DNA from: Guillardia theta CCMP2712
Taxonomy: Eukaryota > Protista > Cryptophyta
Assembly: GCF_000315625.1 (NCBI RefSeq)
Contig: NW_005434663.1
Span: forward strand, 186,001 to 250,000
DNA length: 64,000 nt
Direction: 5' to 3'
Within the stretch, counting starts at the first letter, position 1. Every line of letters starts with the position of its first letter. Below are positions 43,101-50,064 of the stretch, piece by piece. The notes under the pieces were generated by a model, which did no database searches, was not told where the DNA came from, and saw only the letters and a list, made by a program, of their open reading frames with translations. The translations under genes and the position numbers were made by a program.

Positions 43101-45243
43101 TGTTTCGCTCCCAGAGGTGGAGGCGGCGCGATGACACCAACCCAGTCGGACCGTCAAGAAGATCTCTGGTGGATCGCACGCGGAAAGACGGAGCTGGCAA
43201 TTCAGTTCGAGCAGTGGGGAAGCTAAACCTGGAGGCAAGGCTCGCTGCTGCTCCTTCACTTCCCATGTTCACACCTTCCACGCACGCCATCGTCGACGTC
43301 ATCATAGTTTGCTGTCTGGGAGTCAGAGTTGAGCTGTCGCTCTTGACCATCGCCCGCGCCACCTTGTTGACCTTGTCGAGCACAAGCAACGTCTCTCCCT
43401 GCTCCAGCAACTCCCTCCACTCGCTCTCAAAGAGCTTCACGTCCCCGGATATGATCCTCCTGCCGTTCCATCGAATGCGCTCCCTAAGGACCACAAGGAA
43501 CAAGACGGTGGCGAGGATGACGATGGAGATGACAGGCCAGTCCTCTGACTTGGCGAGAGTGAAACCCGAGACTATGAGAATCATGCTAGAGCAGATGGTC
43601 TGCTCGAAGACAAGCGCCTCGCTGACGATGAGCGGCACTGGAAAGATCGTGATGCCCTGCAGGCGGGTCATAGACGGAAGACCAACAGCCACCTCGCTCT
43701 CACCACCAACGCCTCGATGAGGAGACTGACGGGGTTGCCATAGACAGAGAGCTTGTAATCGTGGCCATTTGCCATGAGGACGGCGCTCGAGCACAACGAC
43801 AACAGGTAGAGGAAGGTGAAGCCAAAGGAGATGATCTGCTGATGCGTCAGCCCGGCAGCGAGCTGGAGAAATCTCACCTTCACGGGGATGCTGTACTTCT
43901 CGAGGAACGCAACAACAGCTGCTGCCAGCATGATGAGGCCGGAGATCGCCCTGGCAACGATGTAGGCGTATTCCGGCCATAGGCAATCGAAATCGATGAA
44001 ATTGAAGGGAACCGCGACGTTTCTGGCAGCAGGTAGATGGAACTCAGGGACGTCGGAGAGGACTTGCTGCCTGGAGGAGAGTATTTCTCCTCGATGATTT
44101 CCGCACTGTTTGGAGAGCGTGATCAGTCGCCAATTAACGCCGTCGTGTGATCCCTCTAGCGCGAACTTCACGGGGTCTTGATCTACAGGCCCTTTCCCGG
44201 TGGTCAGGAACCAGCCATCAAAGGACGTCGGAGAAGGAAAGAAGAGGATTTCAGAGCTGCCGTCAGCAGCAGACGCGTTGGTATGGAGTAGAGGGCAGCC
44301 TCCTCGCATGATGCCGAAAGAAGAGATCCCAGCGCTTGTGATCGCCTTCCCCGTTGCACCGTTGCGAAGTTGTAACGCTTGAAAGCGCACGAGAGAGAAG
44401 CTTTGCATCTCCAGCTCTTGGACTTGAGACCAGGGAGCAAACAAGATCGCATTGGGCGGTCGAAGCAGGAAGAGCAGACCGACGACGAAGAGAACCATCT
44501 GCATCCATCTCAAAGTCACCGCTGATGAAAACGGGCGCCTCGAACAGAAGACCCTCCACGATTCATTCCTAAAGATGTTGTTCCTAGCAAAGATGAGCTT
44601 GTCTTGCAGACTGTTGCCATTCTTTGAAGCCACAGATGAGAGATAATCCAGCAGCTCCTTGTTCTTGGCTTCCTCTTCTGCTACCCCGACATCCTCCGGC
44701 CTCGAAGAGTCCGACAAGTCATCGTAGACCTCCTGCCATTCAATGGATCCAGTCTCAGAATTCTTCTTCTTCCTCCGGTCAAGCGTCCTCCCTGCATACA
44801 CCTCGCCGTGAAAGCATCGGGCGCCGAGGAGCTGAAGAACTTGCAGTAACCTGAAATCCTTCCGCGCGGAGTTGAAGATGTCAACTATCTTCAATCGAAA
44901 AGGGCCTTGACGTCTCCGTATGAGGCGGGATGAAAGTAGACGAGGGTAGCAATCCTCTTGGTTTTCATAGGCTACATGAAAGCTTTCGTCTGCTTCTGAC
45001 CTGTTCTCAAGCGAGATGGCAGGATCGAAGAATATCTCGAAATCATGTTGCGACAAACTTCTATTCCAACCGGTCGACTTCAGATGCTTGTGACCCATCA
45101 TTGATGGATTGTCCTTCTACAACTACAAAGGGTCATGTGCGGCTGGCACTCGCTTGACCTACCCCTTGGTTCACAACGGCAGGCCGTGTTGAAGCCCAAG
45201 GAAGTAACGTCATGGAGGCGATCCGAGACGGAACCCCTTCCAT
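40133..45243 (-). CDS. Membrane protein with two (6TM + ectodomain + RelA/SpoT-like nucleotidyltransferase) modules
   Basis: Two homologous cytosolic domains: LKYVSKAIEK..DIVR..GYRDVCVN..CELQL..HKRY and LKSVDRAIEK..DVVR..GYR|DVALN..CELQ|L..HKRY; last exon LVLDRFMTLKTADGHKRYVEFRNKRCE* ends at 40133; start approximate. Confidence 0.8.
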
Positions 45244-45921
45244 GGGATGAGAAGCTTGCTGCTTTTTGCCTCAAATCAATCGTCTGAGGATAATTCTTGC
45301 ACTATGAGCAACAAGAAATCCGATTCGATGGCAGTGAGAAGGAAGTCGACAATGCAGAGAGAGAGGAAGATGACAACGTGAGGGGGGCTGGGCGGGAGGA
45401 GGAGGGAGAAGAAGTAGAGGAAGACGAGAAGGGGAGGATGAGGAGAGGAGGATGAAGAGAGAGAAGTCGAGAGAGCAGGAGGAGTGGGGCTCGCTCAGCA
45501 CAAGGAGCAGGTCACAAGTGCCGCATTGACATGGCGACCCGGCGAGGCTGGCGATGTGGTGGGCTGACGGCCAAAGAGCGTACATGGCTAAAACATTTTA
45601 TTTCAGGTACTGCGAGATATAATGCTATATGGATATTAAATTATAAAATACGATATCGTAGTACAAATATAAATATAAATGTTAAATTACACTGTGTAAA
45701 GTAAAAAAAAAAGGCAATCTCCCTGCCACCCCAGAAAATAAAGTTGAAAGGGGGGGTGATCAAATAATGTTGGTGAAAAATAAAAATTCCTCTAGAGTTA
45801 GATTACAGATCTGATACATTGGGTGGTGTGATACAGATACGTAACGAGGGACGATATTCATTTTAGCTCCAGCAATTCTCTTCCTAATATTTGATTAGGT
45901 TACTCAGTTTATCACAGCAGT

Positions 45922-47928
45922 ATGTCTTCGCTCACTGCGCTGCTCCTGTGCTTGGCCTGGAGCTCCGCGGCTGTAGGAGGAGGGAGAGGCCGCGGAGAGA
46001 CCTGCTTCTCCTTCGCTCCTGCCACGACGAGCTTGAACTGCTTCAGAACCATGCCGCCTCTCTGCCATCCTCGGAAGCATGCACTTGAGAGCTGGGATAC
46101 GGAAACGCGCAAAGTAAGGTTGCAGCATCGCAATGGACCTGCCACGAATGTTCCAAGTCTGCGAATGGGATCCGATGGTGCACTCGAAAGAATCATCATA
46201 GACAAGGAGCGAGAAGTCATGGTGATATTTCCTGTTGCCCCAGCCGTAAAGAAAGAGTCAGTGAAGTTTCAGGTCTGTTTGCCTTTTTGTGTGGGGCCCT
46301 CGTTGTTGTGATGGTTTCTTCTGTTCTTAGATGGGCAGGAATTCAATATTTCTTTCAGTGGATGAATCGACGTGAGCGCATGAATCAAGATTGCTTTCCT
46401 GGACTAACTTGAAGTAGGCTTCTCGATGGTGACCTCTGGAACCAAGCCAACTTAGACCTGAGCTACTGGGAGTTTGACTCCTACCAGCAGCACGAGAGAG
46501 CGATCGTGCTGCATGTGGTGCCTGACCTCTATTGTGCTGTCGTCTTCATCTGACTGTGCGGCAGGCAAAGATCGGAAACATGGCCTGGCCGGTGCTGCTG
46601 GCTAAGGAGTACGACCCGAAGACCATGGTAGATCGGGTAGGATGCAAGTCCATCCTCCAGCTTCTCTCAAGCTCTTGATGTACAGAATGCAACGATGACA
46701 CCTGAGAAGAGGAAGGCGACACCGGAGGAGCTCAAGCTCATTCGAGACGCTTACTGGCACCAAGTGAACTCTGGGAAGGTGGAAGTGGTGAATCGACGAG
46801 CAGAAGCGAAGCAAGTGAGGGAGAAGTTGAGAGAGCTTATGCGTCTCCGGCTTGAGGCAGGTCTTACCTTGCTCCTCCCTGCAAGTTGACGCGTGATCAG
46901 GTCCTTAACCGAACAGCCTCCCTTATCAACCGCCTCGTTGCCACGCCAGAGCTGGGAGTCATCAAACCTGATCTGTTTGAGAAAGTTCGCTCAAACAATC
47001 CAGAGCTCCAAAAGTTGGAGGGTGAAATCGTTCGTCTCAAGGCTGAGCTATGGAAGCTGCAGCCTCCTGGCCTCTGTGTTCTCATCCCCAATGCGGTGAA
47101 CGAAGTTGGCGGAGGCTGGAGGGAGCTAGATGCGAGTGTGTTGTACCAGGTGAGCATGCAGGCCGACAAGTCTAGTCTCCTTGCTCGCTCATGCGCTGCT
47201 GATGTCAGCAAACGTTTCCTCCTATCCAAGAGTTTGTCCTTGCCGCAGACGAAGACATGCGCTTCTTCAACGACTCGGAAATGTCAAGGATTGAAACTGC
47301 CTTGGCTTCCACGGGCTCGGCTGGTTGTTGATGTGGTTGTGGCGTTGCTTGTGCTCACGTTCATGTCAGATGGGGCCAAAATCCGCAGAGTGGCAGCCAG
47401 GATCATGCGAGACTTCCAAGGAACCATTCTAGAAGGAGCGCAGGAGAGGCTGGCAGAGCTGCAGCCGGAGCTGGTGAAGGAGGGAGGGATGCTGTATCCT
47501 CCAAACAGAGCCCAAGCCTTCTGGGAGGTGAGAAAGGCGAGGAAGCGCCTGTTGAAAATGAGTCAAGCGTAGGAGCTCAAACATCTCTTGCGCCTTGCGC
47601 ACTATGCGACGGCGATAGGAACACGCGAGTACACGAGGAGCCGGGTATGTGAAATGATGTAAGCGAGAGGGGATGAGGGCTTAGGTTGCACAGGATGTGA
47701 CGGCGTTCAGAGAGATGCTGTCACAGATCGACATCCCGCGGGCTCTCGTCGTCGAGTCCCTTCAAGCCATGCAACTCCGCGCTGGCTACTTGTGCAGGTA
47801 GAGGTGCCGTCGCTCGCGTAAGACCTGAGGCATACAGCAGGTGCGCCAAGGAATCGCCAGAGAGCTGGGTGGCGTCCTTTTCCTCCTTGCAGCACTTGAT
47901 AGATGGAATGAATCATACTGTGAGCTAA
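45922..47928 (+). CDS. Plastid-targeted CS (p23/NudC-like) domain + phycobiliprotein (allophycocyanin-like) fold fusion
   Basis: Signal peptide and CFS-FAP; CS-like DKEREVMVIFPV...LLDGDLWNQANLDLSYWEFD...WPVLL; spliced exons 47209-47323, 47370-47527, 47573-47644, 47694-47797, 47841-47928 encode a complete phycobiliprotein-like sequence. Confidence 0.8.
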
Positions 47929-48222
47929 ACCGCGTCCTGTCATCTCTTCTCTACATCTCGCTAGCTTAGTGGCTCTTTCATTTCCCGCGGCTGCGCAATG
48001 AACGAGACTCTTGGGTTACTACGCTCGTCACTAGTAGAGCCCGACAGCAGGTCCGCCTCATTGTCTGGTGTGTTTGACTTTTGACTAGCCTTGTCAAGGG
48101 CTGGACTCTCACACAGTGAGAGTACAGGAGGAGGAGGAGCAAGGGGAGGAGGAGGTAGGAGCACGGGGACTAGGGAGCAGGTCTAGTAGGAGAGGCAGGA
48201 GGAGAAAAGAGCAAGTGAACGA

Positions 48223-50064
48223 ATGGCGACTGAGTCCGAGGCTGGAGGGGTCGAACATGCGCTACAAGGTCGGTAGAAGCTCTGACGGTTATGTCAGTTG
48301 CATGTGACAATCTTGATGGGAGAGACTCAAGGTTGGCTCGATGAGCAACTCAGGGCTCATGAGGATGGTGAGCAAGCGCCTGAGGTCTCAGACGACAACA
48401 GCCAGCCATCGGTCTCTAGCAGCAACGGAGGGATGGATAGGAAGGTGCTGCTTGCCGCTCGCGTTCGTCCCATGTCAGAGCGCGAGCTTGCGATCAAGGG
48501 TGAGAGGTGCGTGCGGGTGGATTGTGACAACGGTTACCTTGCGCTCATGGAGCCTGACACGCGGGAGGCGAAGGTGTTTGTGCTCGACTACGTGTACGAC
48601 TCATCTGCTCCTCCTGGTCACCCTGACGCGCAACAAGGAGCCTCCTACGCCAGCAACCGCACTGTCTTCGCAGACCTCGGGAGGGTGTGCCTGCAGAACT
48701 TCTTGGAGGGATACAAGGTGTCGGTGTTCGTGTACGGACAGGAGGGAACCGGCAGGAGACACACCATGTTAGGGCATGAGGTTGACCCCGGCCTCCTCCC
48801 GCGTCTGCTGGAGGAGATTGTCGACCAGCCCGAGGTGACGCACTGAGGGGGAGCTGAGGAAGGAGCTCATGCGAGGCCAGGTGATGGAAGGGAAGTTGAC
48901 GCTGCGGGGAAGTCTATACAAGATAGAGCAGGAGCAGGTGGTCGACCTGCTGAGCAGAGACCTCACCAAGAAGCTGCACGTGCGAAGCAACAGGGCAGGA
49001 ACAGGAAGCGACGTTGTCGGGCTGACTTGGAAGCATCTTACAACCTCCGACGAGTGCGAGGAGTTTGTCAGGCTTGTGAGCGCTACTGCCCTCCCCCTCC
49101 TCTAGCTGAGTGACTGCCCTGGCAGACCCATCGCTCCTCGGAGCTTGACAGCAACGGAGCGACCTTGCTGTGCAGCTTTGAGCTGTGCTCGCGCATCTAC
49201 CGCCCTCATCCGCATCCCAACAGGTGCGGGAGACTGCCAGGAACAAGAAGATAATATCACATGATGACGAGCAGGGCGCCAGTGGAAGATCTCAAGACCT
49301 TCAGCAAGCTTCACCTGGTAAGGCTCTCCCGCAAGTCCGGGACAGAAGAGAGCGCGATGATGAAGGCTCTGAGGGTACCTGCGCAAGCTGTAAGAGCATC
49401 GGCCATGCCATGTCGGAGGAGACTGACAAATCGCAGGTGTCGATCGACAAGTCTGTTCTTGTGAGCTTCAGCCCTGCGGGTTTCGTACTGACACAGTTGG
49501 AGTAGTCATGGAGTTCTGTCATGTCCGCCTTGGCCGAGAAGCAGCTGCTCATGGTAAACAAGCCCCCACCCTCTTCTTCCTTCACTCATGCGCCTCGCAA
49601 GTCGCAGGGACGCAAGGCGGAGAAGTCGATTTCCCACGTTCCTTTCCGCAGCTCGGTGCTCACGAGGGTGCTGGAGGACAGCATGGGGCACGAGTCTCGC
49701 ATCTTCGTCATTGCCACAGTTTCTCCCAGCAGCTCGGTGGGTCAGTCGTGATGCCCTTCCAAGAGGCTGACGCAGGCGCAGGCGTACCGAGAGAGCATGC
49801 ACACAGTAATGGAGCAGCGGGAGAGCGCGGGGAGCTGACGATGAGGCAGTTCAGGCATGTCGTGAGGTCAAAAGAAGTGAGGAGGATGAAGACAAAGGAG
49901 GAGCTCCTACAGGCTTACGCGCACATCCCTGTGTCGCTTCCCCCTTGCAAATCTCATTCGCTTGACCTCATGCCATGCAGGAATTCATTCCTTCCGCAGG
50001 AGGAGGATGGCGATGGGCGTACAGCACTCGCGTGACGGTCGACAAGGAACCATCAGAGATGTGA
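48223..50064 (+). CDS. Kinesin motor-domain protein with degenerate nucleotide-binding motifs
   Basis: ARVRPMSERE, FVLDYVY, VFVYGQEGTGRRHTM, EQVVDLL, SKLHLVRLS, HVPFRSSVLTRVLEDSMG, IATVSPS. Confidence 0.82.

What the first reader, a model, noticed from the sequence alone, without database searches (positions are those of the whole stretch)
45922..47928. Hidden nuclear phycobiliprotein-fold gene fused to a CS/p23 co-chaperone domain, lacking the bilin cysteine
Seen only after splicing four short introns: IQEFVLAADEDMRFFNDSEMSRIETALASTGSADGAKIRRVAARIMRDFQGTILEGAQERLAELQPELVKEGGMLYPPNRAQAFWEELKHLLRLAHYATAIGTREYTRSRDVTAFREMLSQIDIPRALVVESLQAMQLRAGYLC...LQHLIDGM. Known: this follows allophycocyanin-alpha end to end (IVNADAEARYL..ELDRI; PDVVSPGGNAY..TATCLRDLDYYLRL.TY; REMYKSLGTP..AVAEGVRAMK; FDYLIGAM). 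The chromophore Cys is Phe (AQAF) and the bilin-contacting RD is EE. Cryptophytes lack phycobilisomes and use plastid-encoded beta subunits with unrelated nuclear alpha subunits. Inference: a relic phycobilisome-type subunit repurposed, with an N-terminal CS domain and plastid leader, as a chaperone or surrogate partner for CpeB folding, bilin attachment or lumenal import, or as a non-covalent tetrapyrrole binder.
Basis: partly seen in the sequence, partly recalled or inferred. Interest (0 to 1): 0.9.

Follow-up and report, generated by a model that had tools for sequence, protein, structure and literature searches.

The report
Pigment-site-less phycobiliprotein relative in cryptophyte
The nuclear genome of a cryptophyte alga holds an expressed gene for a protein with the fold of a light-harvesting phycobiliprotein that has lost the usual pigment-attachment site and is joined to a chaperone-type domain. 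It belongs to a small cryptophyte family that I could not find described, and it seems to descend from the little-studied AplA-like branch rather than from a phycobilisome subunit.

Summary
Window 45922-47928 (+) is one 11-exon gene for a 506-aa protein. All ten splice joints lie in single ~1.5-kb transcript contigs from three studies, so the CS part and the phycobiliprotein part are one mRNA.

- **C-terminal domain:** it scores 76 bits on Pfam PF00502 and models at pLDDT 96. Only phycobiliproteins match it in the PDB. The chromophore motif CXRD reads F-W-E-E.
- **CS/p23-type domain:** a home-made profile and a paralog on another contig support it (hhalign 95.9%). The Pfam CS model did not find it in the split exons.
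- **Not fully hidden:** NCBI already holds the last 174 aa as a partial "hypothetical protein" (GUITHDRAFT_66095) with the Pfam hit. I found no paper on it.

The interpretation needs correcting. Other cryptophytes have 375-399-aa orthologs. These carry classic plastid leaders and the same lost motif, but no CS domain. The tree places this clade inside the AplA-like branch (cyanobacteria, red-algal and cryptophyte nuclear genes), and an alpha-subunit origin is rejected (AU p = 0.018).

Function is inferred only. Most likely it is a pigment-less binding or holdase module for phycobiliprotein-fold partners. Interest is moderate to high; it is a new variant of a known kind.

The parts
45922..47928 (+). 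Whole coding region, 11 exons and 10 introns, 506 aa. Exons: 45922-46272, 46331-46371, 46418-46517, 46565-46636, 46686-46856, 46901-47149, 47209-47323, 47370-47527, 47573-47644, 47694-47797, 47841-47928 (stop 47926-47928).
   Evidence: The model was built by hand and checked for frame. All ten joints are present in single transcript contigs of runs X1, X5 and X9, which come from three studies.
45922..45972 (+). Signal-peptide-like N-terminus (aa 1-17, hydrophobic core aa 3-13). A Ser/Thr/Pro/Arg-rich stretch follows up to about aa 85.
   Evidence: Hydropathy scan. Orthologs carry a signal peptide followed by an Ala-Phe motif. Here the first Phe comes about 12 residues after the likely cut.
46186..46627 (+). 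CS/p23-type (HSP20-like beta-sandwich) domain, aa ~89-185, spread over exons 1 to 4.
   Evidence: Home-made CS profile: 18.7 bits on the whole protein, against at most 4.1 for 2000 shuffles. hhalign 86% alone and 95.9%, E 5e-9, together with the paralog on contig C77. Not reported by Pfam PF04969 on split exons.
46857..46900 (+). Intron 5, GC-AG type, 44 bases.
   Evidence: Joint 46854>46899, which can shift by up to 3 bases, in three runs. Only the GC..AG placement keeps the reading frame.
46698..47223 (+). Helical middle region (aa ~193-333) shared with orthologs of other cryptophytes. It holds the motif P-P-G-L-C at 47063-47077.
   Evidence: Alignments A1 and A3. In the ortholog P0061 this region models as long helices at pLDDT 80-90. 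No Pfam, PDB or Atlas match.
47224..47925 (+). Phycobiliprotein-fold domain (aa 334-506).
   Evidence: PF00502 76.1 bits. The best PDB sequence matches are allophycocyanin subunits, E 4e-9. AlphaFold2 pLDDT 96, pTM 0.91. The Foldseek top 50 are all phycobiliproteins. The best Atlas match is a 193-aa cyanobacterial 'phycobilisome protein' cluster, TM 0.84, rmsd 1.9 A.
47519..47575 (+). Degenerate chromophore motif. Phe417 (47519-47521) replaces the bilin Cys. Glu419 (47525-47527) and Glu420 (47573-47575, across intron 8) replace the Arg and Asp of CXRD.
   Evidence: HMMER alignments to ApcB2 and ApcA2, MAFFT alignment with canonical subunits, coordinates.
47793..47844 (+). Family-specific cysteines (Cys477 and Cys479, motif L-C-R-C) at the end of helix G. 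Cys477 is invariant in all family members seen.
   Evidence: Alignment. It lies two to four columns from Cys-139 of phycoerythrin alpha. Its function was not tested.

Best explanation
This is a real, transcribed nuclear gene of Guillardia theta for a 506-aa protein. The protein has four parts: a signal-peptide-like leader, a CS/p23-type beta-sandwich, a helical region, and a C-terminal phycobiliprotein-fold domain.

Shown: the domain has the fold but lacks the CXRD chromophore motif, reading F-W-E-E. The same loss (F/Y, then E/D/Q-E) is kept in orthologs of other cryptophytes. Those orthologs carry classic signal-peptide-plus-Phe plastid leaders and the same helical region, but no CS domain.

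Favoured by the tree: the family arose by duplication of a Cys-bearing AplA-like gene. AplA-like genes form a branch of phycobiliprotein paralogs. Cyanobacteria have them, including Prochloron, and so do red-algal and cryptophyte nuclear genomes. Guillardia keeps one on contig C70.

Inferred: having lost the covalent site and the Arg that holds the bilin, the domain no longer works as a pigment carrier at that site. It most likely serves as a pigment-less protein-binding module in the plastid. It would pair through the usual phycobiliprotein helix-hairpin interface with a pigmented partner of the same fold, either the AplA-like paralog or the plastid-encoded phycoerythrin beta subunit. In Guillardia a CS module, copied from a second CS gene on contig C77, adds a holdase or Hsp90-co-chaperone-type function to it.
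For: Gene and transcript.

Fold: PF00502 76.1 bits; PDB sequence matches to allophycocyanin subunits; AlphaFold2 pLDDT 96; Foldseek top 50 all phycobiliproteins; Atlas TM 0.84 to a 193-aa cyanobacterial paralog cluster.

Lost motif. The role of CXRD is taken from Rockwell et al. 2023, PMC10151467.

Orthologs: P0003, P0004 (Teleaulax amphioxeia), P0005, P0006 and P0058-P0061. The full-length ones are 375-399 aa and open with a signal peptide and an Ala-Phe motif. All score on PF00502. They also lie on marine metagenome DNA contigs as intact open frames.

Descent: tree with 100/100 for the family, and 96/85 for its sister link to the P0053/P0038/P0020 clade, inside the AplA-like branch. A shared loop insertion and a shared G-G-x-L-Y-P-P-x-R-A motif. 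phmmer gives 58 bits to P0011 against about 40 bits to the best allophycocyanin. An alpha-subunit origin is rejected, AU p 0.018.

The branch is AplA: the marine Synechococcus member P0074 lies between a CpeT-family gene plus a small ORF and a CpcG-type linker gene. That is the aplA position given by Grebert et al. 2021.

CS module.
Against: Nothing here shows what the protein binds, or that it is free of bilin.

- BBAG-2 globins bind bilin without a CXRD motif.
- The family has an invariant Cys near the phycoerythrin alpha-139 site. A pigment could therefore sit elsewhere.
- The AU test does not reject placing the family with all canonical subunits together (p 0.134). The family sits on a long stem branch (1.32).
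- The CS domain is confined to Guillardia, so it says little about the family's core role.
- The Guillardia leader lacks Phe at the likely cleavage site, so stromal targeting is not assured.
- The Pfam CS model itself did not report the domain.
- The one complex prediction I sent was not folded.
Confidence: 0.55

Rival explanations
1. The gene is a relic of a phycobilisome alpha-type (allophycocyanin alpha) subunit, transferred to the nucleus and repurposed with a CS domain as a chaperone or surrogate alpha partner for folding, bilin attachment or lumenal import of CpeB.
For: The best solved-structure sequence matches are allophycocyanin subunits, and the best NCBIfam model is ApcA. A CS domain fits a chaperone role. 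Cryptophytes do need to handle a plastid-made beta subunit without a classical alpha (Green 2019).
Against: The tree puts the family in the AplA-like branch. A clade with alpha-type subunits is rejected (AU p 0.018). ApcA scores 37.9 bits against a cut-off of 270. AplA-like proteins score higher than any allophycocyanin. The CS domain is missing from every ortholog seen. There is no evidence of contact with CpeB.
Confidence: 0.15
2. The domain still binds a bilin or another tetrapyrrole, either non-covalently in the old pocket or covalently at the family-specific Cys near the G-H loop. It would then act as a sensor, carrier or regulator of bilin metabolism rather than as a pigment-less module.
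For: The AplA-like parents keep CXRD, and in 24 of 80 cyanobacterial loci they sit next to a lyase-type HEAT-repeat gene. Cys477 is invariant in the family and lies close to the phycoerythrin alpha-139 position. BBAG-2 globins bind bilins without CXRD (Rockwell et al. 2023). From my own knowledge, the ApcE phycobiliprotein domain also attaches its bilin at a non-canonical Cys.
Against: The Cys, the Arg and the Asp of the motif are all changed, and the change is conserved. The second and third family cysteines are not invariant. No spectroscopic or lyase data exist.
Confidence: 0.25
3. The gene is a decaying leftover without function. It is transcribed but drifting after loss of the chromophore site.
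For: A long stem branch and loss of the defining motif.
Against: There are intact open frames in at least eight cryptophyte or metagenome lineages at 40-60% identity, with conserved motifs outside the pocket and conserved leaders. The model is confident. Spliced transcripts appear in every RNA-type run examined.
Confidence: 0.03
4. The CS part and the phycobiliprotein part are separate genes or a mis-assembly, and the fusion is an artefact.
For: NCBI's model holds only the last 174 aa and is marked partial. No 506-aa protein is in the protein collections searched.
Against: Single contigs of 1488-1529 bases in three runs from three studies span 45916-47929 across all ten joints without any mismatch. 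The frame stays open through all 11 exons.
Confidence: 0.02

Closest known systems
AplA / allophycocyanin-like proteins of cyanobacteria (Montgomery et al. 2004, cited from memory and through Grebert et al. 2021)
   Same: Same fold and the closest sequence kin. They share the G-G-x-L-Y-P-P-x-R-A motif, the tree places the cryptophyte family inside this branch, and the best structural match is a 193-aa cyanobacterial member cluster. Like AplA, it is not a phycobilisome building block.
   Different: AplA-like proteins keep the C-W-R-D motif and are about 190-200 aa. This protein reads F-W-E-E and carries about 330 extra N-terminal residues: leader, CS domain and helical region. It is also nuclear and has introns.
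Allophycocyanin alpha, alpha-B, beta and beta-18 subunits (ApcA, ApcD, ApcB, ApcF)
   Same: PF00502 fold over the whole length. They are the best solved-structure matches, E 4e-9 to 1e-7, TM about 0.7.
   Different: About 20-24% identity. It scores far below the equivalog cut-offs. There is no chromophore Cys. A clade with the alpha-type subunits is rejected. Cryptophytes have no phycobilisome for it to join.
Phycobiliprotein-like domain of the core-membrane linker ApcE
   Same: A phycobiliprotein fold embedded in a larger multi-domain protein, without the usual Cys at the canonical position (own knowledge). 4xxi appears among the weaker fold matches.
   Different: No linker repeats and no loop insertion. 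ApcE was not among the best sequence matches. ApcE still binds bilin.
BBAGs, bilin biosynthesis-associated globins (Rockwell et al. 2023, PMC10151467)
   Same: Phycobiliprotein paralogs with roles outside light harvesting. Some lack CXRD yet bind bilin.
   Different: BBAGs are bacterial, sit in pre-PcyA / V4R clusters and branch outside the light-harvesting proteins. The BBAG-like sequence in my tree (L124) does not group with this family.
CS-domain co-chaperones (p23, Sgt1, NudC family; Pfam PF04969)
   Same: The profile alignment covers the beta-sandwich core, including the L-D-G-x-L-W and S-x-W-E strands.
   Different: It is divergent enough to escape the Pfam model on split exons. It is fused to a phycobiliprotein fold and sits behind a secretory or plastid leader. 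I could not find this architecture described.

Membership tests
Phycobiliprotein superfamily (Pfam PF00502, Phycobilisome protein) | Scores above the Pfam gathering threshold over most of the model | tested here: met
   76.1 bits against 22.2, profile positions 2-140 of 155. The raw six-frame genome scan gave 20.7 bits on exon 8.
Phycobiliprotein superfamily (Pfam PF00502, Phycobilisome protein) | Globin-like helical fold with an N-terminal X-Y helix hairpin | tested here: met
   AlphaFold2 pLDDT 96, nine helices. The Foldseek top 50 are all phycobiliproteins, TM 0.63-0.75. Atlas TM 0.84.
Phycobiliprotein superfamily (Pfam PF00502, Phycobilisome protein) | CXRD chromophore motif (Cys thioether; Arg and Asp contacts to the bilin) | tested here: not met
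   The motif reads F-W-E-E, and F/Y-x-E/D/Q-E in the orthologs. Definition of the motif from PMC10151467.
Phycobiliprotein superfamily (Pfam PF00502, Phycobilisome protein) | Carries a covalently bound bilin | not testable with these tools
   Needs expression with bilin synthesis and lyases, then zinc-blot and absorbance.
Allophycocyanin alpha (NCBIfam NF058521, equivalog) | Scores above the equivalog cut-off and groups with alpha-type subunits | tested here: not met
   37.9 bits against a cut-off of 270. The AU test rejects a clade with the ApcA/ApcD/CpcA/CpeA rows, p 0.018.
AplA-like (allophycocyanin-like) branch | Falls within the clade that holds the marine Synechococcus aplA-position gene and its cyanobacterial kin | tested here: inconclusive
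   The ML tree nests it there with 96/85 and 85/59 on the relevant branches, and it shares the motif and a loop insertion. However, a tree joining it to all canonical subunits is not rejected (AU p 0.134).
AplA-like (allophycocyanin-like) branch | Conserved C-W-R-D chromophore motif | tested here: not met
   Nearly all B-branch sequences have it. This family does not.
CS domain (Pfam PF04969) | Match to a CS profile over the beta-sandwich | tested here: inconclusive
   The Pfam model gave nothing on single exons or in the genome scan, and the spliced protein could not be handed to the Pfam tool. A home-made profile from ten Pfam-positive Guillardia CS stretches gives 18.7-22.2 bits. hhalign together with the paralog gives 95.9%, E 5e-9.
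Cryptophyte bipartite plastid-targeting leader | Signal peptide followed by a transit peptide whose first residue is Phe | tested here: inconclusive
   The orthologs P0006, P0058, P0059, P0060 and P0061 have a signal peptide plus Ala-Phe. The Guillardia protein has a hydrophobic core at aa 3-13, but its first Phe is near aa 29. No signal-peptide predictor was on hand.

The most novel reading that the evidence does not exclude
The Cys-less family is the missing handling factor for the cryptophyte antenna. In this reading it is a pigment-less stand-in for the lost alpha subunit that holds the plastid-made phycoerythrin beta subunit during bilin attachment and hands it on for transport into the thylakoid lumen. 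Several orthologs carry an Arg-Arg plus a short hydrophobic stretch in their leaders, which fits this. In Guillardia the job would be reinforced by a fused CS co-chaperone domain.
Probability: 0.15. Interest if true: 0.85.

Novelty: new variant of a known kind. Interest (0 to 1): 0.6.

Why it matters
A 2019 review states that the phycoerythrin beta subunit is the only trace of the phycobilisome left in algae with red-derived secondary plastids (Green 2019, PMC6921069). This gene and its Cys-bearing paralog on contig C70 show that cryptophyte nuclei keep two more phycobiliprotein-fold lineages.

One lineage is AplA-like, with the pigment site intact. The other is a cryptophyte-specific offshoot that has given the site up, yet is conserved, plastid-directed and expressed.

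Three things follow:
- It gives a concrete candidate for the unsolved questions of how the beta subunit is folded, pigmented and moved to the lumen.
- It gives AplA-like proteins a eukaryotic setting, in red algae and cryptophytes, in which their unknown function could be studied.
- It shows a phycobiliprotein fold recruited into a multi-domain protein with a chaperone-type module.

Tried and rejected
- **First splice models:** a search for the fewest introns gave a wrong model. My first hand model had a 56-base GT-AG intron 5. The transcript contigs showed a 44-base GC-AG intron instead.
- **Pfam on single exons of the N-terminal half:** no hit. PF04969 over the whole genome found 13 CS stretches but not this one. 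A PDB sequence search with exon 3 found nothing.
- **Handing in the spliced protein:** the spliced 506-aa protein has no reference and I did not type it. It was therefore never given to Pfam, the structure predictor or the big protein searches. Only its parts, and NCBI's partial model P0002, were used.
- **Search for a full-length database entry:** a profile search with A1 found no 506-aa form. An exact look-up of P0002's contig was withheld.
- **Helical middle region:** no Pfam, PDB-fold or Atlas match. It is not related to the HEAT-repeat gene that sits beside cyanobacterial AplA-like genes (hhalign probability 0.1%).
- **Complex prediction (P0002 with the AplA-like P0053):** not folded, because of a pairing rule of the tool. 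This is no evidence either way.
- **Literature:** I searched for the gene identifiers, PF00502 with Guillardia, nuclear-encoded allophycocyanin in cryptophytes, and AplA in eukaryotes. I found no description of this family. The Guillardia antenna proteomics paper and the Guillardia globin paper do not mention it.
Full report
**What is in the sequence.**
The window is G000:C11:186001-250000 of an 87-Mb, 669-contig assembly. A protein hit names the organism as Guillardia theta CCMP2712. Reading 45000-48600 and testing frames gave a multi-exon gene on the + strand, from ATG 45922 to TAA 47926-47928.

Public runs settled the model. Eleven runs of the RNA type hold about 0.56 of the sampled words, as expected for a spliced message, and four DNA-type runs hold 0.75-0.92. 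I laid three of the RNA-type runs, from three studies, on the region. Each gave one contig of 1488-1529 bases, and the longest runs from 45916 to 47929. All three cross ten joints without a mismatch.

Nine joints are GT-AG. The fifth can only be placed in frame as GC-AG (46857-46900). The final model has 11 exons and 506 aa.

**Not entirely hidden.**
A search with the longest open frame of the region returned P0002, 'hypothetical protein GUITHDRAFT_66095, partial' (XP_005838403.1 / EKX51423.1). It is 174 aa and has PF00502 on record. It differs from the transcript-supported model only by one extra Ser at the last junction.

The N-terminal 332 aa are missing from that model, and no 506-aa form is in the collections searched. 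I found no paper that mentions the gene or the family.

**The phycobiliprotein domain is real.**
- P0002 scores 76.1 bits (E 3.9e-21) on PF00502 over profile positions 2-140 of 155.
- Against solved structures the best sequence matches are allophycocyanin subunits (ApcB2 3.7e-9, ApcA2 1e-8). In these alignments Phe lies on the chromophore Cys, and Glu-Glu lie on Arg-Asp.
- With a 41-row alignment AlphaFold2 gives pLDDT 96 and pTM 0.91, with nine helices.
- The 50 best Foldseek matches in the PDB are all phycobiliproteins, TM 0.63-0.75.
- In the ESM Atlas the best match is a 193-aa cyanobacterial 'putative phycobilisome protein' cluster, at TM 0.84 and rmsd 1.9 A over 162 residues.

The CXRD motif is the usual covalent site and hydrogen-bond pair (Rockwell et al. 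2023). Here it reads F-W-E-E: Phe417, Glu419 and Glu420.

**The CS domain.**
Pfam found nothing on single exons. A whole-genome PF04969 scan listed 13 other places but not this one. The domain is cut by three introns into pieces of 13-33 aa, which may explain this.

I therefore cut ten of the Pfam-positive Guillardia stretches, built a profile and searched the spliced protein among 2000 shuffles. The protein scored 18.7 bits at aa 95-160, against 4.1 for the best shuffle. hhalign gave 86%.

Exon 3 also finds a paralog on contig C77, at 47% identity and E 1.4e-5. The intron after the second strand sits at the same place in both genes. The spliced paralog scores 32.6 bits and the window region 22.2 bits (Z = 1). 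The two together match the CS profile at 95.9%, E 5e-9, over 66 columns. I take the CS/p23-type fold as probable, and as copied within the Guillardia lineage.

**Relatives.**
An exhaustive HMMER search with P0002 found 50 proteins at E up to 1e-3. They fall into two groups.

*Family A.* This group holds P0003-P0010 and P0058-P0061. One member is from Teleaulax amphioxeia, and the rest are from transcriptomes and marine metagenomes.
- They are 40-44% identical to the Guillardia domain.
- They share the helical region before it (motifs such as A-D-P-R-L-A, P-P-G-L-C-A-L and G-Y-V-R-E-M-N-A).
- They have F or Y for the Cys, and E/D/Q-E for Arg-Asp.
- The full-length ones are 375-399 aa. They open with a signal peptide followed by Ala-Phe, the classic cryptophyte plastid leader.
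- None has a CS domain.
- The ortholog P0061 models with a disordered leader (aa 1-77), then long helices at pLDDT 80-90 before the phycobiliprotein fold. Only the latter finds matches.

*Family B.* This group keeps C-W-R-D. It includes:
- a second Guillardia gene on contig C70, which scores 36 bits on PF00502 and has a signal peptide followed by Phe;
- MMETSP transcripts with similar leaders (P0053, P0101);
- a nuclear gene of the red alga Rhodosorus marinus (P0015);
- many cyanobacterial proteins of about 190-200 aa named 'phycobilisome polypeptide'.

A scan of bacterial genomes found 459 such stretches, including Prochloron and Paraprochloron. The marine Synechococcus member P0074 lies between a CpeT-family gene plus a small ORF and a CpcG-type linker gene at the start of the rod region. 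This is where Grebert et al. 2021 place aplA. I therefore call family B AplA-like.

**Descent.**
I cut canonical subunits (ApcA/B/D/F, CpcA/B, CpeA/B and far-red paralogs) from three cyanobacterial genomes. I then built an IQ-TREE tree of 56 rows.
- Family A is one clade (100/100) on a long stem.
- It is sister (96/85) to the P0053/P0038/P0020 group, next to the Rhodosorus group, inside family B.
- The canonical alpha-type and beta-type subunits form the other half of the tree.
- A shared loop insertion after helix Y and the G-G-x-L-Y-P-P-x-R-A motif agree with this placement.

The AU test rejects a clade of family A with the alpha-type subunits (p 0.018). It does not reject family A joined to all canonical subunits (p 0.134). 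The AplA-like origin is therefore favoured, not proven. The ApcA equivalog model gives 37.9 bits against a cut-off of 270.

**How it most likely works.**
Shown:
- the fold, the lost motif and its conservation;
- the plastid leaders of the orthologs;
- the transcript;
- the CS-type module.

Inferred:
- With Cys, Arg and Asp all replaced, the old site no longer holds a bilin covalently.
- A conserved, expressed, plastid-directed phycobiliprotein fold without a pigment is most simply a binding module.
- Phycobiliproteins work as dimers of paralogs joined by their X-Y hairpins (established knowledge). The likeliest partners are therefore the Cys-bearing AplA-like paralog or the abundant plastid-made CpeB.
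- The CS module suggests holdase or Hsp90-linked handling, but in Guillardia only.

I put identity and descent at about 0.85-0.9, and this mechanism at about 0.3. I give the combined statement 0.55.

The main rival (0.25) is that a bilin is still bound, either non-covalently or at the invariant Cys477 near the phycoerythrin alpha-139 position. BBAG-2 globins show that CXRD is not needed for binding. Decay and artefact are unlikely.

**Limits.**
- The spliced full-length protein could not be handed to Pfam, the structure predictor or the protein searches, because it has no reference.
- The single complex job was not folded.
- No signal-peptide predictor was on hand, so the Guillardia leader is ambiguous. 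Its hydrophobic core is at aa 3-13 and its first Phe is near aa 29.
- The species of most orthologs are unknown.

**Novelty.**
Green (2019) writes that the phycoerythrin beta subunit is the only remaining trace of the phycobilisome in these algae. Neither that review, nor Rockwell et al. 2023, nor the Guillardia antenna proteomics paper mentions these genes. The fold and the branch are known. The Cys-less cryptophyte family, its N-terminal region and the CS fusion are not. I class it as a new variant of a known kind, with interest 0.6.

Noticed in passing
G000:C70 about 181,240-182,290 (- strand); L001 1100-2154: A second nuclear phycobiliprotein-fold gene of Guillardia, of the AplA-like kind. 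It has a signal peptide ending in A-N-A followed by Phe, about six exons and an intact C-W-R-D motif. It scores better on PF00502 than the window gene (36 bits on one exon).
   Followed up: partly
G000:C77 about 195,400-196,000 (- strand); L131: A paralog of the CS module of the window gene: 47% identity in exon 3, and the intron after the second strand at the same place. Its N-terminus looks like a signal peptide followed by Phe, so Guillardia may have a small family of plastid-directed CS proteins that the Pfam CS model does not report.
   Followed up: partly
window 46857-46900: Intron 5 is a GC-AG intron of 44 bases. The other nine are GT-AG and 43-59 bases long.
   Followed up: yes
window 47798-47840: NCBI's partial model uses an acceptor three bases upstream (a CAG-CAG tandem) and so carries one extra Ser. 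The transcript contigs of three runs show the 43-base skip only.
   Followed up: yes
L013 5112-6020, and 24 of the 80 loci L015-L094: Cyanobacterial AplA-like genes often sit next to, and in L013 overlap, a 302-aa HEAT-repeat gene with phycobilisome-lyase repeats (PF03130, E 7e-29). This hints at a dedicated E/F-type lyase or partner for AplA-like proteins.
   Followed up: partly
L053, L063 (Paraprochloron, Prochloron): AplA-like genes are kept in Prochloron-type cyanobacteria, which lack phycobilisomes (own knowledge). This argues for a role outside light harvesting.
   Followed up: no
P0061 aa 55-75; P0060, P0058, P0006, P0059 leaders: The leaders of family-A orthologs hold an Arg-Arg followed by a short hydrophobic, Ala-rich stretch after the Ala-Phe motif. 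This could be a twin-arginine signal for the thylakoid lumen. The Guillardia protein has no such stretch.
   Followed up: no
window 47793-47844 and the orthologs: Family-specific cysteines (L-C-K/R-C, then P-K-C-W) sit at the end of helix G and in the G-H loop. The first is invariant and lies close to phycoerythrin alpha Cys-139 in the alignment.
   Followed up: partly
window 47913-47929: The transcript contigs of all three runs end within 16 bases of the stop codon, and raw-read depth drops there. Either the 3' UTR is very short or the assemblies break at this point.
   Followed up: no
P0001 (ENA contig of 2099 bases): A metagenome contig carries the same region at 97% protein identity, intron-derived stretches included. 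A close Guillardia relative is therefore present in an environmental assembly.
   Followed up: no
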